Virus record (IMG/VR): IMGVR_UViG_3300010430_000003
Coordinates: 146,327-210,326 of that record
Strand: one strand, 5' to 3'
Length of the DNA: 64,000 nt
Below are positions 10,846 to 45,772 of the stretch, piece by piece. The notes below the pieces were generated by a model, which searched no databases, was not told the origin of the DNA, and saw only the letters and a list, made by a program, of their open reading frames with translations. The position numbers and the translations under genes were made by a program. The first letter of the stretch is position 1. Every line of letters begins with the position of its first letter.

Positions 10846-10919
10846 TGGATATCAACTGAGGGTTTCGAACCTTCATCCTCCCCATCACAGGGCACTTTAC
10901 CACTTAAGTTAAGTTGATA
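10846..10919 (-). tRNA. tRNA-His(GTG)-like RNA with shortened anticodon arm (pseudo-tRNA or mimic)
   Basis: TATCAACT/AGTTGATA acceptor, D-arm ACTT-AAGTGGTA-AAGT, loop CTGTGAT with only a 2-3 bp stem, T-arm GAAGG-TTCGAAA-CCCTC, then TCCA. Confidence 0.6.
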
Positions 10920-23286: not shown

Positions 23287-26200
23287 ATGGGTGGTCTCGC
23301 TGGTCGTATCAAATATCTTTATGAAGGTGATTTAACCTTCAAAGAACTTAAAACTATTCTTGAAAATATTTCATTAAGTCACCTTCCTCTTTATGAAAAA
23401 GTGGATGGATTTAATTGCTATTTTTCTTGCAGAAGAGGTATGCCTGTAATGGCTCGAAATCTGACCGAAGCACGGTCAGGTGGTTTATCCATCATTGAAC
23501 TATCAAATCGAGAATTTAAAGGTGGCAAGAAAGTAAAGAAGGTTTTTATTGAAGCCCTCAAAAATTTCTCCAAAGATTTCAGACTCTTAGATAAGAAAAT
23601 TTTTGAAAGCGATGGGAATCAAGTTTTTTATAATTTTGAAATCGTTGACAAAAATACGAATCGTTTGTTTGAATATGATAGTAACGGTCTTGTCTTGCAC
23701 AACTCTGGTCATTTCTGCATTGTTGAAAATAATAAACATTTTGTCAATGGCGATGGTTTTAGAACAGGAACTATCGGAACCAAATATATTAAGCATAATT
23801 TCAAAACCTCTCTTAGAGAAAATTCATATTTTGATGGAAGTTCATTCATACAAAGAATTGATGAAGTAATGCAATCAGTTGGATTGTCTGAACTCAATTC
23901 AATTTCAGAATTGAAAGAGCAAGAGAGACTCAAAAAGATTCTTAATGAGTTTTCTAATAATTTAATAAACTCTCTTAAAAGTAATTTTGTTGACAGTCAA
24001 GAAGAAAAAGTAACTCAATTCAAAGATCGAGTCAAAGAAGCTGTTGATTGTCTCCTTGAATATTCAGGTCCAAATCGAGCACAGGTCGTTGAAAAAACTA
24101 TTCATTATTTAAATCAATTCCCTGCCATTGACTCAATCAACTCATGCATTGAAGGGGTTGTTTTTGAACATAATGGCGAAATGTATAAAATGACTGGTTA
24201 TTATAGACCAATAAATCAACTTTATGGCTTTTATCAAAAGACGCTAAAGGAATTCGATTCAGGTCGAATGTATCCCATTGAGCCAAGCTCTTATAATGTT
24301 GACGGTGTTTTGACACATCCTCAAGAAAAAACCATTGCAATCTTTCCTGGAAGTTTTAAACCGCCTCATGCGGGACATTATCGAATCATTGAGGAATTGA
24401 AAAAACTCAAAACTCCTGATGGTTTTCATATTTGTAATAAGATAATCATTTTAATTTCTAATAAGGCTAGAATGGCTCAATCTGATTCGAAAACGACATA
24501 TGTCACCGCTGAGATTGCTAAGGAGCTTTGGGATCTCTATGTGTCAAATGAAGATGCTCAAACTCGAATTGAAGTCCGAGTTGCAGATCACGACACTCCA
24601 ATTAAGTGTGTTTATGATATCATGCTTAATGAAATGTCTCCCGGCGAAACTTTGATGTTGGTCAAATCAGATAAAGACGCAAATTCAGATCGATTTAATG
24701 CTTTTTCAGATTTCTCGGATGAATATGACCTCGGTGTTAAGGTTATTGCAAAAGAAATGAATATCTTCTCTGCGGGAATTTCAGCTTCAAATATGCGAAA
24801 CTGGATTGCTGATGGAGATGAGGATAGGTTCAAGGGCTTCCTCCCAGATCACTTATCGTCAGAAGACCGCGCTCGTGGTTGGGAAATTGTTACCGGCGAA
24901 CAAGACGTTTCGTTATCGGAAGACGACTCTTTTTTTTTAAGTGAAGGGTATGACGCTCTTCTTGAAGGAGAAGGTGATAAACGTCTAAAGAGTGCCCTCC
25001 GGAAGAACCCAGATTATAAAGAACAAATTGAAGCTCTTGCTGCAGCTGATCCTTCCGGCAAAGGAAGGAAGCTTTTGCCTTGGATGGTTCGTGAGCTTGT
25101 GAAGTTTGATGGCGGGCGAACAAATGATATTATTGCTGTGATATCATTGTTTTGGCAATATCGGCAACGCTTTAAAGCAGCTTCCTATTCAACCGATGTT
25201 TTTTCATATTCCTTTGAAGAAATGTTGACTCTCCTTAAGAAATTAAGACTCACTCCTCGTTTTGATAAAATTAAGTCTCCTCTTCGAACATCCAATTATC
25301 CCGGTTCTTCTGTTGTGTATGAGGAAGAAGACTTTGCTGTGATCCGACCATATACCTTTGAAGCTTCATGCTATTTTGGAGAAGAGGGAAATTGGTGCAT
25401 CTCCACTGATGAGGGTCATTGGAATGACTATGTCGGAAATGAATCTGTTCATTATATCTTAATTAATGATTCAATTAAATTTGAAGAAGATGCTGATTCA
25501 AAAATTGATTTTGTTGTAAGACATGGTACAGTCATGGAGCTGTGGGATAAAGAAAATACTTCTCTTGATGAAGATTATGTGGAAGAGCTTCTTGGAGAAG
25601 AACTCTATAACAAAATTGAACAAGCAATTTTAACAGATTATGAACGTGATCCTGATAATGAAGAAACAGGTAATCGCAAAGAGTGGATTGAACTTCAATC
25701 TGAAATCGAAGCTGATTGGGATGATCGAAAATATATCACATGTGAGATATATGAATATGATTCGAATCAATTCCAGCTTCAAGCTTGGATTAATATTGAC
25801 TTCGATGAAACGAATATAAAATTAAAACCGCAAGAACGCTCTTGGCAAGCGTCTCAAAAATTTTCTCATGCAATTGAAGCAATTATTGATTATACAATCG
25901 AAGATGTTGAAGTTGATGGGAATACAATTCGTGGTAGAATATACCTTGATGATGTATTTACCCCTGATGACGCACAATATAGTTGGGAGCAATTAACAGA
26001 AAAAGATGATTATCTTCAAGGTGATGATCCCGATGACAACATTCGAGCCGTTGTTTATTCACTGTGGGAATATGATTTAATTGAAGGTGAAACAGAAAGT
26101 AAAATAGAAATCATCAAAAAGATTGATGAGCATGAGTTCAGATATCTTTTCGCCGATTTTGATGAAGATGAAGGGTTATCGGTTCAATTTACTCTCCACG

Positions 26201-29118
26201 ATTTAATGCTTCCCATTTTTCCAGAACAATATGTTGTTTACGAAGATAAAGGGGTGGATTCAATGCGTCCAAATCTTAGTACACAAAGTTTTCAAAATAG
26301 AGCAATTCGAAGGCAAACTTTCGAAGGTGCAGACATTAAAATGCACACTCAAGATTTCTTTAAAAAGTTTGGAATTCCCACTTCTCTTGTAACAGCATCA
26401 GAACATGAAGTTATTCTTGGAGAAAAAGCTTATGGAATTGTTAATAAGAATTTAGAAATGGAAACGTTTGCTATTAGAGATAATTCTGGTGTTGAAAACT
26501 ATAGAGATGTCGATGAAAAAGTAAGTTCTGTTGTTAAACAGGCCGGGAAGGATCCTGATTTCTTAGATGGTGGAATAATTGTTGAATATTTCTCGAAGGA
26601 TGGGAAACTTGTAAATTCTGTTCATTGCTTGATTAAATTCTATCTTTGGATTGGAATAGCAGATCTTTTATATATTGATGATGATGACATGGCTGGCTTA
26701 TTGGAAAAGCTTATTGAATTAGATTCAAGCGGTAAAATTGAAGATTTCCGAAACCAAATTAAAGATCTCATGCTCGGTAAAAGAAAGTCAATTATGCAAA
26801 ACGATCTCGGAAAGATTAAAGATAATATAGGCAGGAAGTTTATCAATAAATATTATCTATCTAACTTTTCCGTAACAGAATCCTTTACTGATCAAATTCT
26901 CGAAAAATGTGGTCCTGATAAAACTGTGATTGTTTGGAATTCTCCTAGATCCCAAAACACAGATCGATATTTCCTTGAGGCAAAGCTTGAAGCTATGAAT
27001 AGGGGGATTGATACGTCTGGACTATATTACGCTCCAGTTAATGAACTGTTCATGACCGAACATGGATTGATAGAAGAAGAGATTAACGGTGGCTCTTCTG
27101 ATCAGTTTGCTGTTGTTCCAAAGATGAATACAAAGGCTCATTGGTATTTTAATAATTTAAAATCAGAAAATCAATTGGCTTCTCATTCATTGGGACAGTT
27201 TCATCTGTTAATGGAAAATCGGGTTGATTTCTTGCAAAAGACATATCGTGAGAAAATCTTCAATAAACTGATCAATAGTCTTTCAACACTCTATATGGCA
27301 GAAATAGACCACTTAAATTGGAAGTGGCTTGGACCTCACATTGTTGCCGCTTATAATAAGGTAATGGAAGACCCAGCCGTCGGGAAAGAATTCCTTTCAA
27401 GTATTGAAGAAGACGACATTGAAAGACTTAAAGACCAAGCATTTGAATTCTTTATTGAAACTGATCCTTCTAAAAAGAAAAAGTTTAGCCAATGGTTGAT
27501 CTTTAAGTTCATTAAAGATGACGAACGCATTGAAGATATCTGGAGTTCGGCGGGTGATCTTGAGCTTTTCGAACAGCTTGTTGAACGAAGAATTATTATA
27601 GGTGTTGATATCAACAAACTTTCATTAAAAGAACTTAAGGAAATTGTTGATGAACATGAAGGTCAGTTATCTGCTCGACAGAAGGCTGGTAAAGGAAATG
27701 AAAAAGAGCAAATCATCAAGAATGAAATGGACGTTCTCTTTCAAGAGGGTGAATATGTGATGGCTCTCCCAAAAACACAAAGAGCTTCATGTCTTCTTGG
27801 TACAGAAACACATTGGTGCACCGCTTCTCGTGGTGATCGCAACATGTTCGACATGTATTACGAAGACGGCCCGTTGATTGTGTTTATTACTCCTGCCGGA
27901 AAGTGGCAGCTTCACATTGAATCAAAACAATTTATGGATAAGAATGATTCTCCTATTGATTTATTACCTTGGATTGATTCCAATGAAATTTTCAAGGAAC
28001 CATTTTTGAAATTCTTGCTCGATAATGAATGGGATAAAAAGCTCGATCAAACCGATATATATAGCCAATATTTTTCAAATTCGGGAATGTTGAGAGATCT
28101 CTCCATTTTTATATTCCAAGAAACATTAACAGAAGAAAAAGCATTGGATATCATTGAGAAAGGCTCCCGACCAAAGAATGCTACTCACGTTGATTTTGGA
28201 ACCAAAAACTCATTTGGTGGGGAAATCAAGAATAAAATGTTATTCGATATCTTATGGAATTCAGAACATAAGAAGTGGTGGAAGCTTAAGAGACGTTGGG
28301 TTAGAAAACTTGTAGAAGCTTATGAAAATGGGGTCGTTCCCGTGGGTCAAATAAGAAAAGATATGGTGAATAACTTTATCAATCTAATGCCTCCCAACGA
28401 TTTCAAAGAAATCTTCATGCCAACTTTTATAAGTGAAAATTATCCAACATCCAGAGAGATGTTTTTGAAAACAATTGCTATTGATGCGCTCGGTTTGAAA
28501 ATTGGATTCAATACAGAGAAAGGAGCACAGAATTTTCTAACAATCCTCGAAAGAATAATTAAAAATGAGGGTGAGTCTAATCTTGCATGGAAATCATATC
28601 AAAATTCCATCGAACCAAAAGGTTGGGTGTTAGAGATGCTTAAAAGACCAAATCTTAAAGAATGGTATTCTCAAAAATTTGAAGAATTAGATTATGCTCA
28701 AAGAACCGCCGTAGCCTTCGATATGCTTAAAACAGGTAAGAAAAACAATGATCAAATGTCAGGCTCCTCAAATGTTGAATTCGTTGACGATAACTCCCCA
28801 ATTACCAAGTTCTTCATTCCAAGACTCAAAAAAGGAATTTCGGGATCAAAAAAATATAATGACTTCCCAAAATTGGGAGGTTATTTATCGCAATGGGAAG
28901 AGATTAACAAACTTGATCCAGAGATTACCGATATTTGGGTTGATACATTCTTAAATGCAGTGGAAAATGGAAAGGATAGTGATTCAAAAGAAAGGCAAAT
29001 GTCATGGATGTACGGTAACATTACTGATAAACATGGGAATCCTATTAGATATGGACCACCTCAATTCAAACAGTTGATTGAACCATTGAAAAAAGCACTT
29101 GGGCGAGATCATGATTGA
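23287..29118 (+). CDS. 1943-aa multidomain (polyvalent) protein: ligase-like nucleotidyltransferase + HxGH cytidylyltransferase-like + two copies of a DPS...ASC..G..WC module
   Basis: EKVDG, EGVV, YKMTG (ligase motifs I/IV/V); FPGSFKPPHAGH...ISASNMR; WC-module repeats near aa 590-750 and 1390-1560. Confidence 0.75.
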   Translation: MGGLAGRIKYLYEGDLTFKELKTILENISLSHLPLYEKVDGFNCYFSCRRGMPVMARNLTEARSGGLSIIELSNREFKGGKKVKKVFIEALKNFSKDFRLLDKKIFESDGNQVFYNFEIVDKNTNRLFEYDSNGLVLHNSGHFCIVENNKHFVNGDGFRTGTIGTKYIKHNFKTSLRENSYFDGSSFIQRIDEVMQSVGLSELNSISELKEQERLKKILNEFSNNLINSLKSNFVDSQEEKVTQFKDRVKEAVDCLLEYSGPNRAQVVEKTIHYLNQFPAIDSINSCIEGVVFEHNGEMYKMTGYYRPINQLYGFYQKTLKEFDSGRMYPIEPSSYNVDGVLTHPQEKTIAIFPGSFKPPHAGHYRIIEELKKLKTPDGFHICNKIIILISNKARMAQSDSKTTYVTAEIAKELWDLYVSNEDAQTRIEVRVADHDTPIKCVYDIMLNEMSPGETLMLVKSDKDANSDRFNAFSDFSDEYDLGVKVIAKEMNIFSAGISASNMRNWIADGDEDRFKGFLPDHLSSEDRARGWEIVTGEQDVSLSEDDSFFLSEGYDALLEGEGDKRLKSALRKNPDYKEQIEALAAADPSGKGRKLLPWMVRELVKFDGGRTNDIIAVISLFWQYRQRFKAASYSTDVFSYSFEEMLTLLKKLRLTPRFDKIKSPLRTSNYPGSSVVYEEEDFAVIRPYTFEASCYFGEEGNWCISTDEGHWNDYVGNESVHYILINDSIKFEEDADSKIDFVVRHGTVMELWDKENTSLDEDYVEELLGEELYNKIEQAILTDYERDPDNEETGNRKEWIELQSEIEADWDDRKYITCEIYEYDSNQFQLQAWINIDFDETNIKLKPQERSWQASQKFSHAIEAIIDYTIEDVEVDGNTIRGRIYLDDVFTPDDAQYSWEQLTEKDDYLQGDDPDDNIRAVVYSLWEYDLIEGETESKIEIIKKIDEHEFRYLFADFDEDEGLSVQFTLHDLMLPIFPEQYVVYEDKGVDSMRPNLSTQSFQNRAIRRQTFEGADIKMHTQDFFKKFGIPTSLVTASEHEVILGEKAYGIVNKNLEMETFAIRDNSGVENYRDVDEKVSSVVKQAGKDPDFLDGGIIVEYFSKDGKLVNSVHCLIKFYLWIGIADLLYIDDDDMAGLLEKLIELDSSGKIEDFRNQIKDLMLGKRKSIMQNDLGKIKDNIGRKFINKYYLSNFSVTESFTDQILEKCGPDKTVIVWNSPRSQNTDRYFLEAKLEAMNRGIDTSGLYYAPVNELFMTEHGLIEEEINGGSSDQFAVVPKMNTKAHWYFNNLKSENQLASHSLGQFHLLMENRVDFLQKTYREKIFNKLINSLSTLYMAEIDHLNWKWLGPHIVAAYNKVMEDPAVGKEFLSSIEEDDIERLKDQAFEFFIETDPSKKKKFSQWLIFKFIKDDERIEDIWSSAGDLELFEQLVERRIIIGVDINKLSLKELKEIVDEHEGQLSARQKAGKGNEKEQIIKNEMDVLFQEGEYVMALPKTQRASCLLGTETHWCTASRGDRNMFDMYYEDGPLIVFITPAGKWQLHIESKQFMDKNDSPIDLLPWIDSNEIFKEPFLKFLLDNEWDKKLDQTDIYSQYFSNSGMLRDLSIFIFQETLTEEKALDIIEKGSRPKNATHVDFGTKNSFGGEIKNKMLFDILWNSEHKKWWKLKRRWVRKLVEAYENGVVPVGQIRKDMVNNFINLMPPNDFKEIFMPTFISENYPTSREMFLKTIAIDALGLKIGFNTEKGAQNFLTILERIIKNEGESNLAWKSYQNSIEPKGWVLEMLKRPNLKEWYSQKFEELDYAQRTAVAFDMLKTGKKNNDQMSGSSNVEFVDDNSPITKFFIPRLKKGISGSKKYNDFPKLGGYLSQWEEINKLDPEITDIWVDTFLNAVENGKDSDSKERQMSWMYGNITDKHGNPIRYGPPQFKQLIEPLKKALGRDHD

Positions 29119-31576
29119 TTTAAAAGAAATAGAGCTAGCGCTCGAAAAGTATTATGATAAAGAAACAACTTTAGAGAACAATCTCTCTTCTTTTTATGAA
29201 AATTTGAGAGAAAATCCGAAGTTTTATTCTTATTCTGTCGCGAGAGAACAAAAAAGAGACCAATTATGCCCTGTGCGTGATCAAAATGACTGGCTTAGAG
29301 AGGAATTCACTCACAGTTCCCCCAATAGCTATTCAGAAGCCATAGAAACCACTGTAAGGTCATTAAAAGAGATTTTGGAGGCACTCTTCCTTGCCTCGCA
29401 AGAAGACTTTAGAGTGGATTCTGTTCGGTCTGACATAATGCGTAATCTTTCGATAATTTTAAAGACAGTTTTGCGGTCAGCGAAGCTCCAAAATACTGCA
29501 AATGACCCTGATATCGTAAATATTGCGAAAAAGCTGCTCAAAATGTCTGATGAACGTATCGGCACCCTTGAGTCTTATGAGCCAGAGATGCCAGAACTTT
29601 TTTATGACACCGCAAAACTCGTATATCAAACAATATATGTGTTAACTGCAGAGATAATCAATAACCCAACTGATTCTAATGTTTTTGATTCTCGAAACTT
29701 ATCAAAGATGCTTGATAAACTTGCAACGGCTGTTCGCCATGGATTTTATGAAGAGGCCTTCAGTGAATTCAGTGAAGGAAGGAATATTCTTAATCCCCAA
29801 CCAGAAATCTCTCCAACTTTGATTGACAAAGCAATTAAATACGAGAAAGACCGTTCGCGAACCACAGATATGGAAGGTCTTTATAATATTGTGCTTGCAA
29901 ACCTTGAAGAAGACCCCGATCATTATAATTTTCTTTTGAAGGGCAATCTTGATGAAATGTCTTCAATGGGAGGTGGTGCAGTTGCCGGCGCCATGGGTGT
30001 GGGTTTCGATCCCGATCCAAAAAAAAAGAAAAGATATGAAAAGTCTTTAATTGGTGAAAATAAAAAGAAGCTTGGGCAATTTTCTGATTGGTTGAAGACT
30101 CCTTTTTTTGGGGGCACTATTTTTTCTGATAATCTCCTTCGACGGCCCGAGGAGTGGGTTGCTGTTCATCCTGATGGGGATCATTTTGTTGATTATCAAG
30201 ATAACGAAGTTAAAATAACAGATGAAAAGTTAAGCATAGTTAGACCTTGGATGTTAGATCCTTCAAAATCCCGAGAAAATTGGGATCCTCATGGTGTTTG
30301 GTCAGAATGGCTATCTGATTATGAAATTATTTATAATGATAAAATTAATAAATTTGAGATTATTGAAAATCTTAAAAATATAAAAGCAAATATTGAAAAC
30401 TTAAGAGCAATTTTTTTCATTAATGAGGAAGACTACAATTTATATTCTAATATACTCAAACCGAATGAATCTCTTCCAAAAGAAGTTTGGGACTCATGTT
30501 TGATTGAACCATACGCTATGAATTATTCAGGTTATCTTGAACGAGATTTTATGCTTGATGGGATTGGGAAAGAAAGTAATGATATCTATTCTTCAAAAAA
30601 GTATTCGGTGGAGCCATGGGCAGAAAAGCATGGTTTGGGCTCTGTTGCTCAATCACATATGTTAACACAAGTTTATTGTAAAGGAGAAATGACAGACTTA
30701 AAAAGAGAGTTATGTAAAAAACTTATTAATTTAAAACAAACTCTAAATAAAAATTTATCAGAACAACAAGAACATGATTTGAAAATCTTTGAAGATTATG
30801 AAGACTATTTTCGAAATATCCATAAAGAGATTTCAGGAGAAGGAAAGGCTCCCGCAAAATTCTGGAAAGACCCGTTTTGGGTGGGGGCGGTGTTCAGCAA
30901 TTCAAATGGCGATGAATTTATGCTCGAACCAGAATTTGATTTCATCAACATAAATTATGACACCATTGAAGTGCCTGATGATGAGATTTTGGAAATCAAT
31001 CCATATCTTAACATCGATAATAAATATAGCGAAATTCGGTCAGATTATGAAATCACAATGGTCAACACTTTTGTTCACTATGGAGGTTCAGGATATTCCA
31101 TCTTTCATAATGGTCAGGAAAGATACTTAAAAAGCTGGCATGGGGCATATGAGTATTTCATGAATGACAACGAAGAATATCATCATGATACCCACCCAGC
31201 CAAAATGTATTATATGACCCCCTCTTTTGATTTGAGCGAGCTTCAAGATCATGAATGGTTCAATCATGGAAAGAGTGTTTGTTTGGTTGATTTTCATCAT
31301 GAAACTGAAATTTGGTTTTATTTAACAAAAGACAAGTTCATTGATTATCTAATAGATTATAATTCAACTAATAAAAGAATCTCTTATTATGTCCCGAATG
31401 GCACAATAGTAGGTGGGTTGAGAGTGAGATATGATAAATCAGGAATTCCTGATGGAATCTTCAAAGGAAACAAAAAACATAAAGTTCCATTAAATGTCTA
31501 TGTTGAAAAACATGGACCCGTTCCGCAATATAGTGATCTCAAACAAATCGTGAACAAATACTTTTATAGAAAGTAA
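29099..31576 (+). CDS. large putative head-packaged protein
   Basis: 825 aa; LDEMSSMGGGAVAG linker and LxE motifs between segments. Confidence 0.6.
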   Translation: MGEIMIDLKEIELALEKYYDKETTLENNLSSFYENLRENPKFYSYSVAREQKRDQLCPVRDQNDWLREEFTHSSPNSYSEAIETTVRSLKEILEALFLASQEDFRVDSVRSDIMRNLSIILKTVLRSAKLQNTANDPDIVNIAKKLLKMSDERIGTLESYEPEMPELFYDTAKLVYQTIYVLTAEIINNPTDSNVFDSRNLSKMLDKLATAVRHGFYEEAFSEFSEGRNILNPQPEISPTLIDKAIKYEKDRSRTTDMEGLYNIVLANLEEDPDHYNFLLKGNLDEMSSMGGGAVAGAMGVGFDPDPKKKKRYEKSLIGENKKKLGQFSDWLKTPFFGGTIFSDNLLRRPEEWVAVHPDGDHFVDYQDNEVKITDEKLSIVRPWMLDPSKSRENWDPHGVWSEWLSDYEIIYNDKINKFEIIENLKNIKANIENLRAIFFINEEDYNLYSNILKPNESLPKEVWDSCLIEPYAMNYSGYLERDFMLDGIGKESNDIYSSKKYSVEPWAEKHGLGSVAQSHMLTQVYCKGEMTDLKRELCKKLINLKQTLNKNLSEQQEHDLKIFEDYEDYFRNIHKEISGEGKAPAKFWKDPFWVGAVFSNSNGDEFMLEPEFDFININYDTIEVPDDEILEINPYLNIDNKYSEIRSDYEITMVNTFVHYGGSGYSIFHNGQERYLKSWHGAYEYFMNDNEEYHHDTHPAKMYYMTPSFDLSELQDHEWFNHGKSVCLVDFHHETEIWFYLTKDKFIDYLIDYNSTNKRISYYVPNGTIVGGLRVRYDKSGIPDGIFKGNKKHKVPLNVYVEKHGPVPQYSDLKQIVNKYFYRK

Positions 31577-33038: not shown

Positions 33039-33247
33039 TTATGTTCATTGGAGAATGATAAGTAGTAGTAGTTTACATCTTCTATACATCCAGAAATAAC
33101 ATGTTTTGAATATTCAAGTATAGATGCCATACTTGAATATAGCGCTACGGAATAGTGCTTTCCTGGTATGGACGTCCATAAGAACCGACCATGTTGACGA
33201 ACAAAGCCAGCTTTAATCAGATTATTTATTGTTGAATGTGAATTCAT
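33035..33247 (-). CDS. MNIN-family micro-ORF (KAxFVxQ subgroup)
   Basis: MNSHSTINNLIKAGFVRQH; the A of ATG is the tRNA discriminator base. Confidence 0.7.
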   Translation of the reverse strand: MNSHSTINNLIKAGFVRQHGRFLWTSIPGKHYSVALYSSMASILEYSKHVISGCIEDVNYYYLSFSNEHK

Positions 33248-33330
33248 AGCGGGAGAGGGATTCGAACCCTCGAAGCCTTAACGGCAAAAGGTTATGAGCC
33301 TTTTCACTTTAACCACTTGTATATCCCGCA
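33247..33330 (-). tRNA. tRNA with CAT anticodon (Met or Ile2) and long variable arm
   Basis: Acceptor TGCGGGA/TCCCGCT (U1-U72 mismatch), D-loop AAGTGGTTAAA, AAAGG-CTCATAA-CCTTT, V-arm GCC-GTTAA-GGC, GAGGG-TTCGAAT-CCCTC; no encoded CCA. Confidence 0.85.
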
Positions 33331-33692: not shown

Positions 33693-33720
33693 ATTATAGT
33701 ATATGTTGCAATTTTCTCAA
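33693..33720 (-). promoter_or_regulatory. sigma70-like promoter TTGAGA-N16-TATAAT for the ncRNA-tRNA transcript
   Basis: Read directly. Confidence 0.65.
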
Positions 33721-44683: not shown

Positions 44684-45772
44684 ATGATTAATGCAATTGT
44701 AGGCTTGCAGTATGGTGATGAGGGTAAGGCAAAAATCTTTCACTCTCTACTGGAAGATTCTAAGCATAAAGAAAAATACGCCATCCGGTGGAATGGCGGT
44801 CCAAATGCAGGCCATACCGTATGGAAAGATGGCAAAAAATGCGTTTTCCACCAAGTCCCAAGTGGAGTTATTGTAAATGACTGTATCTCTATTATTGCTC
44901 GCGGGTGCGCTTTTGATCCTGACCAATATGAACGAGAAATGAATGAATTTGGTGGTGAGTGTTTAATTGATAAAAAATGCCCTGTGATTTTGCCAATGTT
45001 TGTTGAGAGGGATAAGCAATTTTATCAAAAAGGAATTGGAACCACCGCAAAAGGAATTGGACCAACTTTTTCATCATTCATTGCACGCGATGCTTTGCTT
45101 GTTGAAGATTTGTTGGATCATGAAAAGACATTGGGAAAACTTAAGAGATTAAGTTATCTCTTGCACTCATCACCTGATGAGGATTTAGAAACTCTTGCTA
45201 CAAAACTCCATCTTTTTGCTGTACGCAATGCTGATAGATTTATTGATGCAAAAACTTTAATCCATAATTTGATCAAAAGACATGAGGACAAATATATTTC
45301 TTTTGAAGGCTCGCAAGGATATTCCTTGGATCCATTCCTTGGAGATTATCCATTTGTGACCTCATCCGGCACCAACGTGTCATATCTTATGTGGTCCCTC
45401 GGACTGTCCAGAAAAACCCCAATGGAAGTCATTGGAGTAATGAAGCCATATGTAACGTATGTTGGAACTCGCAACTGGCCTGATGAATATGATCGTGAAA
45501 GGAGTGAAAAGATTCGAGAACTTGGTTCTGAATATGGTGCAACTACAGGAAGACCTCGCCGAATTGGCATGGTCAATTATGATGAGTTGAACGAAGCATT
45601 AACTGCGAATGGTGTGGATAAGATTGCTCTTACAAAAACCGATTTAATGGAAGAGGCAGTCGGGGAGAAGTTAATTGATTTTGAGGATGACATCTTTGAA
45701 AGAACAGGTGTGAACGTGACCATTGTATCAAATGGACCCGGAAGTGAAGATTGGTTTCAATATTTTAATTAA
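44684..45772 (+). CDS. purA: adenylosuccinate synthetase (short form)
   Basis: GLQYGDEGK, GGPNAGHTV, GIGTTAKGIGP, FEGSQG, EYGATTGRPRRIG, LTKTD. Confidence 0.95.
   Translation: MINAIVGLQYGDEGKAKIFHSLLEDSKHKEKYAIRWNGGPNAGHTVWKDGKKCVFHQVPSGVIVNDCISIIARGCAFDPDQYEREMNEFGGECLIDKKCPVILPMFVERDKQFYQKGIGTTAKGIGPTFSSFIARDALLVEDLLDHEKTLGKLKRLSYLLHSSPDEDLETLATKLHLFAVRNADRFIDAKTLIHNLIKRHEDKYISFEGSQGYSLDPFLGDYPFVTSSGTNVSYLMWSLGLSRKTPMEVIGVMKPYVTYVGTRNWPDEYDRERSEKIRELGSEYGATTGRPRRIGMVNYDELNEALTANGVDKIALTKTDLMEEAVGEKLIDFEDDIFERTGVNVTIVSNGPGSEDWFQYFN

What the first reader, a model, noticed from the sequence alone, without database searches (positions are those of the whole stretch)
33247..33330. CAU-anticodon tRNA on a class II (Tyr-like) long-variable-arm scaffold with a U1-U72 mismatch
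Seen: anticodon loop CTCATAA, 15-nt variable region TGCCGTTAAGGCTTC with a GCC/GGC stem, 3-bp D-stem with loop AAGTGGTTAAA, A73, and mismatched 1:72. Established: bacterial Met and Ile2 tRNAs have short variable loops; long arms mark Leu/Ser/Tyr/Sec, and LeuRS/SerRS largely ignore the anticodon. Initiators have a 1:72 mismatch but also three G:C pairs in the anticodon stem, which this RNA lacks (AGG/CCT). Inference: it could be a nuclease-resistant Met/Ile2 substitute or a mischarging tRNA that puts another residue at AUG/AUA.
Basis: partly seen in the sequence, partly recalled or inferred. Interest (0 to 1): 0.62.

Follow-up and report, generated by a model that had tools for sequence, protein, structure and literature searches.

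The report
Phage initiator tRNA with long arm
This is a real tRNA gene of a large marine-sediment phage whose acceptor stem, D stem and anticodon stem are those of a start-codon (initiator, fMet-type) tRNA, but with an extra hairpin arm that no described initiator has; it belongs to a minority class (about 3%) of phage initiator-like tRNAs that I could not find described in the literature.

Summary
An 84-nt tRNA(CAU) lies at 33247-33330 on the minus strand, with U1·U72, A73, a 3-bp D stem and a 15-nt variable arm (ARAGORN; Rfam 48.9 bits).

The 'Tyr-like scaffold / mischarging' reading is not the best one. The acceptor stem UGCGGGA/UCCCGCU+A73 is the bacterial initiator signature: 1:72 mismatch, G2:C71, C3:G70. 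A11:U24 is also present. The anticodon stem is au/GC/GC, a variant known in natural initiators, and it keeps the essential G30:C40.

The genome is a complete 210-kb phage record. It also holds a class I G1:C72 tRNA(CAU) and a tRNA-Ile(UAU), so the elongator roles are already filled.

Long-arm CAU tRNAs are frequent in viral contigs: 87 in a truncated scan, 33 of 84 scored with the strict initiator signature, against 1 of 804 non-CAU tRNAs. They make up about 3% of phage initiator-like tRNAs and occur in a cultured crAss-like Bacteroides phage. Their variable arms fold as hairpins with differing sequences.

Most likely it is charged by host MetRS, formylated by host Fmt and used in initiation. 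What the extra arm does is not shown; escape from host tRNA-directed defence is the leading guess. No RNA data exist, and eight literature searches found no description of this class.

The parts
33247..33330 (-). 84-nt tRNA gene, anticodon CAU, no encoded CCA
   Evidence: ARAGORN; Rfam RF00005 48.9 bits, full length; identical in contigs of other runs
33324..33330 (-). Acceptor stem 5' strand UGCGGGA (tRNA positions 1-7); U1 faces U72
   Evidence: G2:C71, C3:G70 and the 1:72 mismatch are the initiator acceptor signature, found in 1 of 804 non-CAU phage tRNAs
33247..33254 (-). Acceptor stem 3' strand UCCCGCU (66-72) plus discriminator A73
33305..33321 (-). D arm: 3-bp stem U10-G25, A11-U24, C12-G23 with A13·A22; loop AGUGGUUAA
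   Evidence: A11:U24 occurs in 16 of 33 strict long-arm initiator-like tRNAs against 25 of 804 other tRNAs, and in 16 of 17 in the closest subfamily
33287..33303 (-). Anticodon arm AAAGG-CUCAUAA-CCUUU; anticodon CAU at 33294-33296; pairs A29:U41, G30:C40, G31:C39
   Evidence: the au/GC/GC variant is known in natural initiators (PMC5389676)
33272..33286 (-). Variable arm UGCCGUUAAGGCUUC: GCC/GGC stem, GUUAA loop, 3' UUC ending in C48
   Evidence: -4.5 kcal/mol, 0.5% of shuffles as stable. Family-wide, hairpins form from differing sequences
33255..33271 (-). T arm GAGGG-UUCGAAU-CCCUC
33693..33720 (-). Sigma-70-like promoter TTGAGA-16-TATAAT (11 of 12), about 360 nt upstream of the tRNA 5' end; possible start of a precursor transcript
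   Evidence: consensus match only. The 362-nt leader shows no excess structure (z = 0.06) and no Rfam match

Best explanation
It is a phage-encoded initiator-type tRNA, a tRNA-fMet analogue that carries an added variable-arm hairpin. Shown: the gene is a well-formed 7/5 cloverleaf. It has a CAU anticodon, U1·U72, G2:C71, C3:G70, A73, A11:U24 and G30:C40/G31:C39. It belongs to a recurrent class of phage tRNAs that combine these features with a 12-20-nt variable arm. Inferred from established identity rules: host MetRS charges it with Met, because CAU is the dominant Met identity element, A73 fits, and class I synthetases leave the variable region facing solvent. Host formyltransferase then formylates it (1:72 mismatch, 2:71, 3:70, 11:24). 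The 1:72 mismatch keeps it off EF-Tu and so out of elongation. G30:C40 and G31:C39 let it pass IF3/P-site selection. The phage encodes no Fmt, deformylase or MetRS, so it must rely on host enzymes. The purpose of the extra arm is not shown. My leading guess is that it makes the phage copy a poor substrate for host nucleases or toxins aimed at tRNA-fMet (VapC-type and similar), so that initiation continues during infection.
For: The tRNA is real. Initiator features of this gene. These features track the CAU anticodon. The strict acceptor signature is found in 33 of 84 long-arm CAU, 6 of 36 short CAU and 1 of 804 non-CAU phage tRNAs, and A11:U24 in 16 of 33 against 25 of 804. In the closest subfamily (17 sequences), 1:72 is unpaired in 13, 2:71 is G:C in 17, 3:70 is C:G in 16 and 11:24 is A:U in 16. 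There, 90.4% of cells pair against 69.7% in shuffles, and the covariation score is 0.586 against 0.179, with 0 of 500 shuffles as high. Nearest relatives are initiator-like CAU tRNAs of both classes, not Tyr, Leu or Ser. The same genome has a class I G1:C72 tRNA(CAU) and a tRNA-Ile(UAU), which fill the elongator roles. Literature: the 1:72 mismatch and the GC pairs define initiators and can be transplanted (PMC11231383). au/GC/GC occurs naturally, and G30:C40 alone sustains E. coli (PMC5389676). VapC cleaves tRNA-fMet, and phage tRNAs have been proposed to evade tRNases (PMC10264068). U·U is the commonest 1:72 mismatch in the long-arm class (21 of 33) and also occurs in class I phage initiators (8 of 103). 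No phage Fmt, Def or MetRS.
Against: There are no expression, charging or formylation data; only DNA runs hold the sequence. No described initiator in any domain has a long variable arm, and whether Fmt, IF2, IF3 and the 30S P site tolerate one during initiation is untested. Only two of the three canonical G:C pairs are present. The D stem has only three pairs. The nuclease-evasion role of the arm is conjecture: the anticodon loop CUCAUAA, where VapC cuts, is unchanged, and no defence or counter-defence gene recurs next to such tRNAs.
Confidence: 0.6

Rival explanations
1. Elongator substitute: a nuclease-resistant tRNA-Met, or a lysidine-modified tRNA-Ile2, that reads internal AUG or AUA codons.
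For: CAU anticodon and A73. The genome is AT-rich (36.7% GC), so AUA would be frequent. Long arms also occur on phage elongator tRNAs: Asn 15 of 52, Ile-UAU 9 of 49, plus Lys, Thr and Cys.
Against: U1·U72 is the classical anti-determinant for EF-Tu. The acceptor stem, A11:U24 and G30:C40/G31:C39 are initiator marks that are almost absent from elongators (1 of 804). The genome already has a G1:C72 class I tRNA(CAU) and a tRNA-Ile(UAU).
Confidence: 0.12
2. Mischarging tRNA: LeuRS, SerRS or TyrRS recognises the class II shape and loads another residue, which then enters at AUG.
For: Long variable arm, A73 (shared with Leu and Tyr) and a D loop of the same length as bacterial tRNA-Tyr (sequence). 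LeuRS and SerRS ignore the anticodon (established knowledge).
Against: CAU is by itself a strong MetRS determinant. TyrRS needs U35 and G34, both absent. SerRS prefers a longer arm, G73 and C11:G24, and none of these is present. Overall similarity to phage Tyr, Leu and Ser tRNAs is low (best scores 21-23, against 41.5 for initiator-like tRNAs). The family conserves initiator features rather than Leu, Ser or Tyr features. The 1:72 mismatch bars elongation anyway.
Confidence: 0.05
3. Not a working adaptor: a tRNA-like element used as a decoy for toxins that bind tRNA-fMet, as an RNase P processing signal in the operon, or a decaying gene copy.
For: The genome holds two clearly aberrant tRNA-like genes (window 10850-10918, and a 126-nt one at L317:12409-12534). 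The D stem is weak. An ORF starts at the discriminator base. In Verrucomicrobiota, tRNA-fMet 3'-half mimics ride on GIY-YIG cassettes, so initiator-like pieces are used for non-translational ends elsewhere.
Against: Every stem and every tertiary-contact nucleotide is intact. The class is widespread, with compensatory changes in all helices. A decaying copy would not keep the anticodon loop, T loop and identity pairs.
Confidence: 0.15

Closest known systems
Bacterial initiator tRNA-fMet (E. coli metZWV/metY type)
   Same: CAU anticodon, non-Watson-Crick 1:72, G2:C71, C3:G70, A73, acceptor stem GCGGG/CCCGC, A11:U24, G30:C40 and G31:C39, and a 7/5 cloverleaf with normal tertiary nucleotides.
   Different: U·U instead of C·A at 1:72; A29:U41 instead of G:C; a 3-bp D stem; and a 15-nt variable arm where all described initiators have 4-5 nt.
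Natural au/GC/GC initiator tRNAs of some Mycoplasma and alpha-proteobacteria (PMC5389676)
   Same: The same deviation from the 3GC rule (A:U at 29:41, with G30:C40 and G31:C39 kept). Such tRNAs sustain E. coli.
   Different: Those are class I cellular tRNAs; this one is viral and has a long arm.
Class II tRNAs (bacterial Tyr, Leu, Ser)
   Same: A variable-arm hairpin, A73 (Tyr, Leu) and a D loop length like tRNA-Tyr.
   Different: The anticodon, acceptor stem, 1:72, 11:24 and overall sequence are unlike them. The arm is short (3 bp) compared with tRNA-Ser.
Long-arm initiator-like tRNAs of other phages, e.g. Bacteroides crAss-like phage PhiCrAssBcn22 (85 nt, unannotated) and IMG/VR contig L036
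   Same: The same combination of initiator acceptor stem, CAU and long arm. PhiCrAssBcn22 also has au/GC/GC. L036 shares the UACA/AGU D stem and a UGCCGAAAGG arm.
   Different: Sequence identity is low: no relative closer than L036 was found, and the arms differ in length and sequence.
Phage tRNAs proposed or shown to escape host tRNases (PMC10264068; PMC11555353, cited there)
   Same: A phage-encoded copy of a host tRNA that differs structurally from the host version.
   Different: The known cases differ in the anticodon loop. Here the loop is canonical and the difference is an added arm. No nuclease is known for this host.
allo-tRNAs and tRNA-Sec-like tRNAs
   Same: A long variable arm on a tRNA whose anticodon does not match class II identity.
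   Different: Those have 8/4 or 9/3 acceptor/T helices and Ser identity; this one is 7/5 with initiator marks.

Membership tests
Bacterial-type initiator tRNA (tRNA-fMet) | CAU anticodon in a 7-nt loop with U33 and purine 37 | tested here: met
   Loop CUCAUAA
Bacterial-type initiator tRNA (tRNA-fMet) | No Watson-Crick pair at 1:72 | tested here: met
   U1·U72. U·U is the commonest mismatch in the long-arm class (21 of 33) and is present in class I phage initiators (8 of 103)
Bacterial-type initiator tRNA (tRNA-fMet) | G2:C71, C3:G70 and A73 (formyltransferase and MetRS determinants) | tested here: met
   With the mismatch, this signature is found in 1 of 804 non-CAU tRNAs
Bacterial-type initiator tRNA (tRNA-fMet) | A11:U24 in the D stem | tested here: met
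   found in 3% of other phage tRNAs
Bacterial-type initiator tRNA (tRNA-fMet) | Strict rule: three consecutive G:C pairs at 29:41, 30:40 and 31:39 | tested here: not met
   A29:U41, G30:C40, G31:C39
Bacterial-type initiator tRNA (tRNA-fMet) | Relaxed rule seen in natural exceptions: three purine:pyrimidine pairs with G30:C40 kept (au/GC/GC) | tested here: met
   rule taken from PMC5389676
Bacterial-type initiator tRNA (tRNA-fMet) | Short (4-5 nt) variable loop, as in every described initiator | tested here: not met
   15-nt arm. For this reason it is filed as a variant that should work like an initiator, not as an ordinary member
Bacterial-type initiator tRNA (tRNA-fMet) | Charged with Met, formylated, and bound by IF2 in the 30S P site | not testable with these tools
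   No RNA runs; biochemistry is needed
Bacterial tRNA-Tyr (class II) | Anticodon GUA (G34, U35), paired G1:C72, A73, long arm | tested here: not met
   Only A73 and the arm fit. Best similarity to 27 phage tRNA-Tyr is 21, against 41.5 for initiator-like tRNAs
tRNA-Ile2 (lysidine, CAU) | Elongator body with paired 1:72 for EF-Tu; C34 modified by TilS | tested here: not met
   The 1:72 mismatch is present. The genome has its own tRNA-Ile(UAU). The modification itself is not testable
tRNA-Leu / tRNA-Ser (class II, anticodon-independent) | Leu: A73 plus D-loop/tertiary elements. Ser: long (5-7 bp) arm, G73, C11:G24 | tested here: inconclusive
   A73 fits Leu, but the Ser features are absent. Similarity is low (best 23 for Leu, 21.5 for Ser). 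LeuRS tertiary determinants cannot be judged from sequence
allo-tRNA / tRNA-Sec-like | 8/4 or 9/3 acceptor/T-stem architecture | tested here: not met
   7/5

The most novel reading that the evidence does not exclude
Phages have evolved a class II initiator tRNA. The added arm makes the phage's own fMet-tRNA invisible to host toxins or nucleases that shut down initiation by attacking tRNA-fMet, or lets phage factors tell it apart from the host copy. Translation initiation during infection would then run on a phage-supplied, defence-proof initiator.
Probability: 0.25. Interest if true: 0.7.

Novelty: new variant of a known kind. Interest (0 to 1): 0.5.

Why it matters
All initiator tRNAs described so far, in all three domains, are class I. 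A recurrent viral class that joins the full initiator identity set to a class II arm would show that Fmt, IF2, IF3 and the P site can accept a long arm at initiation. It would also give a natural scaffold for orthogonal initiator tRNAs. And it would extend the 'phage tRNAs as counter-defence' idea from elongators with altered anticodon loops to the initiator, by a different structural route. It is testable now, because a cultured crAss-like Bacteroides phage carries one. For annotation, such genes should be labelled initiator-like rather than plain tRNA-Met.

Tried and rejected
**Close relatives**
- No phage record matches the region (megablast).
- The tRNA itself gives only two weak partial hits in 50,697 phage records.
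- Exact-pattern scans for near copies found none, or only L036 plus two chance matches.
- PhoH-based relatives are only about 43% identical and have no long-arm CAU tRNA nearby. Synteny could therefore not be used.

**Expression**
- Only DNA runs of marine sediment hold the sequence.
- Laying contigs confirmed the sequence, but it cannot show RNA.

**The leader between the promoter-like site and the tRNA**
- No excess folding.
- No Rfam match.

**Cellular class II initiators**
- The bacterial genome scan gave 20 true long CAU tRNAs in 120 loci, mostly a Burkholderiaceae G1:C72 type.
- The many Verrucomicrobiota pattern hits turned out to be GIY-YIG cassettes that carry a mimic of the tRNA-fMet 3' half, downstream of a normal class I initiator gene. 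They are not long-arm tRNAs.

**Other checks**
- Guilt by association: I clustered ORFs around 46 long-arm initiator loci against 113 class I initiator loci. No family is present in more than 7 of 46.
- Phage-encoded Fmt, deformylase and MetRS: none.
- Cultured examples: Streptomyces phage GiJojo has an annotated 81-nt tRNA-Met, but its T stem is poor, so it is not a clean case. Further BLAST queries hit only class I tRNA-Met genes.
- Literature: eight full-text searches found no paper on long-arm initiator or CAU tRNAs. The library lacks most subscription journals, so this is not proof of absence.
- PurZ reading of the PurA-like gene: rejected. It is far closer to cellular PurA.

Full report
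**1. The observation**

ARAGORN finds one tRNA in the window, at 33247-33330 on the minus strand, with anticodon CAU. Rfam's tRNA model matches the same coordinates over its full length at 48.9 bits (gathering score 29, E = 2e-7).

Read on the minus strand, the gene is:
- UGCGGGA (positions 1-7), then UA
- D stem UACA/AGUG with loop AGUGGUUAA, then A26
- anticodon stem AAAGG/CCUUU with loop CUCAUAA
- variable region UGCCGUUAAGGCUUC
- T arm GAGGG-UUCGAAU-CCCUC
- UCCCGCU, then A73

The helices follow the canonical 7/5 split. The nucleotides needed for the L shape are present: U8, A14, G18G19, G15:C48 and the T loop. The variable region folds alone at -4.5 kcal/mol, and only 0.5% of its shuffles match that. 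Contigs from two other sequencing runs cover the gene with no differences.

**2. Where it sits**

The window is the last 64 kb of a single 210,326-bp contig of 36.7% GC. It is an IMG/VR virus record with direct terminal repeats, rated 100% complete. Six marine-sediment metagenome runs hold it, and none is an RNA run.

Nearby genes are PhoH, an exonuclease, glycosyltransferases and a trypsin-like peptidase. No phage in the isolate collection is close.

The genome has eight Rfam tRNA matches:
- Gln(UUG), Ile(UAU), Arg(UCU)
- a 73-nt class I tRNA(CAU) with G1:C72
- a 73-nt tRNA with the Leu anticodon UAA but a short variable loop
- the 84-nt gene discussed here
- two aberrant tRNA-like genes

On the minus strand, a strong promoter-like site (TTGAGA-16-TATAAT) lies about 360 nt upstream of the tRNA. 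The stretch between them shows no excess structure and no Rfam match. Small unannotated ORFs follow the tRNA on the same strand.

**3. What it is**

UGCGGGA/UCCCGCU plus A73 is the bacterial initiator stem, with the same features as E. coli CGCGGGG/CCCCGCA plus A73: a non-Watson-Crick 1:72, G2:C71 and C3:G70. The D stem has A11:U24, another initiator mark. The anticodon stem has G30:C40 and G31:C39, with A29:U41 in place of the third G:C pair.

The literature held here supports reading these as initiator marks:
- The 1:72 mismatch and the G:C pairs are what make an initiator, and they can be transplanted onto elongators (PMC11231383).
- au/GC/GC occurs naturally in some Mycoplasma and alpha-proteobacteria, and the middle pair G30:C40 is enough to sustain E. 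coli (PMC5389676).

**4. The family**

ARAGORN finds 87 CAU tRNAs of 80 nt or more in them.

Among tRNAs of those loci that could be scored for acceptor-stem features, the strict initiator acceptor signature (1:72 mismatch, G2:C71, C3:G70, A73) is distributed as follows:

| tRNA group | With strict signature |
|---|---|
| Long-arm CAU | 33 of 84 |
| Short-loop CAU | 6 of 36 |
| All other tRNAs | 1 of 804 |

A11:U24 is found in 16 of those 33, against 25 of 804 other tRNAs. U·U is the commonest 1:72 mismatch (21 of 33). AGG/CCU is the second commonest anticodon-stem variant after GGG/CCC.

The window's tRNA is closest to these tRNAs. The best is L036, at a global score of 41.5, and the top 25 are all initiator-like CAU tRNAs of either class. 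The best phage Tyr, Leu and Ser tRNAs score 21-23.

In an alignment of the 17 most similar members, the named cloverleaf including the extra arm gives these results:
- It pairs in 90.4% of cells, against 69.7% in shuffles.
- The covariation score is 0.586 against 0.179, and 0 of 500 shuffles reach it.
- 1:72 is unpaired in 13 of 17.
- 2:71 is G:C in 17, 3:70 is C:G in 16 and 11:24 is A:U in 16.

Across 42 distinct variable regions, 31 fold into hairpins of 3 bp or more. Mean stability is -3.1 kcal/mol against -0.72 for shuffles (Wilcoxon p = 3e-9). The arm is therefore a selected structure built from differing sequences.

**5. How common it is**

A length-neutral scan (GCGGG ... CTCATAA ... 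GGTTCRA) returned 106 initiator-like CAU tRNAs. Three of them (2.8%) have long arms. The class is thus a small minority of phage initiator-like tRNAs, though numerous in absolute terms.

It also occurs in cultured phages. Bacteroides crAss-like phage PhiCrAssBcn22 (genus Kehishuvirus) has an unannotated 85-nt gene with C1·A72, au/GC/GC and a 17-nt arm. Streptomyces phage GiJojo has an annotated but less regular 81-nt tRNA-Met.

In bacterial genomes the pattern mostly hits other things:
- an 88-nt G1:C72 class II CAU tRNA in Burkholderiaceae;
- in Verrucomicrobiota, tandem GIY-YIG cassettes that carry a mimic of the tRNA-fMet 3' half, downstream of a normal class I initiator gene.

I found no clear cellular class II initiator.

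Long arms are not confined to CAU in these phages. Asn (15 of 52), Ile-UAU (9 of 49), Lys, Thr and Cys tRNAs also carry them, and 24 of 83 Leu-anticodon tRNAs lack one. The class I/class II rule is loose in phage tRNA sets.

**6. Mechanism**

*Shown:* the sequence features above and their recurrence across phages.

*Inferred from established identity rules (my own knowledge):*
- Host MetRS should charge it. CAU is the dominant Met determinant, A73 fits, and class I synthetases approach with the variable region facing solvent.
- Host formyltransferase should formylate it, through the 1:72 mismatch, 2:71, 3:70 and 11:24.
- The mismatch should exclude it from EF-Tu.
- G30:C40 and G31:C39 should carry it through IF3 selection.

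The phage has no Fmt, deformylase or MetRS of its own. Because a class I G1:C72 tRNA(CAU) and a tRNA-Ile(UAU) are present, the elongator Met and AUA roles are already covered.

*Not shown:* what the arm is for. The leading conjecture is escape from host factors that attack tRNA-fMet. VapC cleaves tRNA-fMet, and phage tRNAs have been proposed to evade such enzymes (PMC10264068). Against this, the anticodon loop is unchanged and no recurrent neighbouring gene points to a partner.

**7. Rivals**

- **Elongator Met or Ile2 substitute.** This conflicts with the 1:72 mismatch and the initiator marks, and it would be redundant in this genome.
- **Mischarging by LeuRS, SerRS or TyrRS.** No positive evidence supports it. 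TyrRS and SerRS determinants are absent, and family conservation is of initiator features.
- **A non-translational tRNA-like element or decaying copy.** This is possible, given the two aberrant tRNA-like genes in the genome. It fits poorly with an intact cloverleaf and family-wide compensatory change.

**8. Novelty and verdict**

Eight full-text searches found no description of initiator or CAU tRNAs with long variable arms. The library is incomplete, so this is weak evidence. Database records label such genes simply tRNA-Met, or miss them.

I rate this a new variant of a known kind: an initiator-type tRNA with a class II arm, one of a recurrent phage class. The class itself is of moderate interest, and it is directly testable in a cultured crAss-like phage.

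Noticed in passing
L317:16495-16567 (= genome C1:141494-141566, outside the window): A 73-nt tRNA with the Leu anticodon UAA but a short 5-nt variable loop (Rfam 59.9 bits). In the other phage loci, 24 of 83 Leu-anticodon tRNAs are likewise class I. In this phage, then, the Leu-anticodon tRNA has lost the long arm while the initiator-like tRNA has gained one.
   Followed up: partly
window 10850-10918 (-): A tRNA-like gene (Rfam 41.4 bits, missed by ARAGORN) with normal acceptor, D and T arms, but an anticodon arm of only 13 nt (about a 3-bp stem, CCC-UGUGAUG-GGG).
   Followed up: partly
L317:12409-12534 (= genome C1:137408-137533): A 126-nt Rfam tRNA match (37.9 bits) with 69 nt where the model has a 15-nt anticodon stem-loop segment, i.e. 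an insert of about 50 nt. ARAGORN in intron mode calls it Ser(ACU) with a 50-nt intron. It may be an intron, or the gene may be degenerate.
   Followed up: partly
viral loci L001-L116, e.g. L095:10062, L102:648, L063:7037, L065:8921: Long variable arms also occur on phage tRNAs for Asn(GUU), Ile(UAU), Lys, Thr and Cys. Several Ile(UAU) arms share a loop motif around YAGAUUNG.
   Followed up: no
L204, L219, L225, L241, L269, L271 and others (Paraburkholderia, Cupriavidus, Ralstonia isolates): A conserved 88-nt class II tRNA(CAU), GGGCCGG...CCGGCCC-ACCA, with G1:C72 and A8. It is present in isolate genomes of Burkholderiaceae and in viral contigs (L001, L055, L062, L067). It is not initiator-like, and its role is unknown.
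   Followed up: no
L441:1500-3039 (Verrucomicrobiae MAG) and L440, L442, L250, L238: Downstream of a normal class I initiator tRNA gene lie tandem units of about 330 bp. Each has an 88-aa GIY-YIG ORF (Pfam E = 2e-12) followed by a mimic of the tRNA-fMet 3' half: CUCAUAA, a covarying hairpin, a T arm and CCCCGCAACCA. This looks like a small mobile cassette that targets the initiator tRNA gene. Dozens of Verrucomicrobiota MAGs carry the motif.
   Followed up: partly
window 44684-45772 (+): A 362-aa adenylosuccinate-synthetase homologue, shorter than cellular PurA. By sequence it is much nearer PurA (E = 7e-53) than phage PurZ (E = 4e-11), so a 2-aminoadenine genome is not indicated.
   Followed up: partly
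window 38653-61730 (+): A long run of nucleotide-sugar and glycan genes in a phage: several glycosyltransferases, three GDP-mannose-dehydratase/epimerase-type genes, DegT and class III aminotransferases, a cytidylyltransferase-cupin fusion and split transketolase-like genes.
   Followed up: no
window 23287-29118 (+) and 29099-31576 (+): A 1943-aa ORF with a cytidylyltransferase-like stretch and matches to PHROGs of unknown function, followed by an 825-aa ORF with no family match.
   Followed up: no
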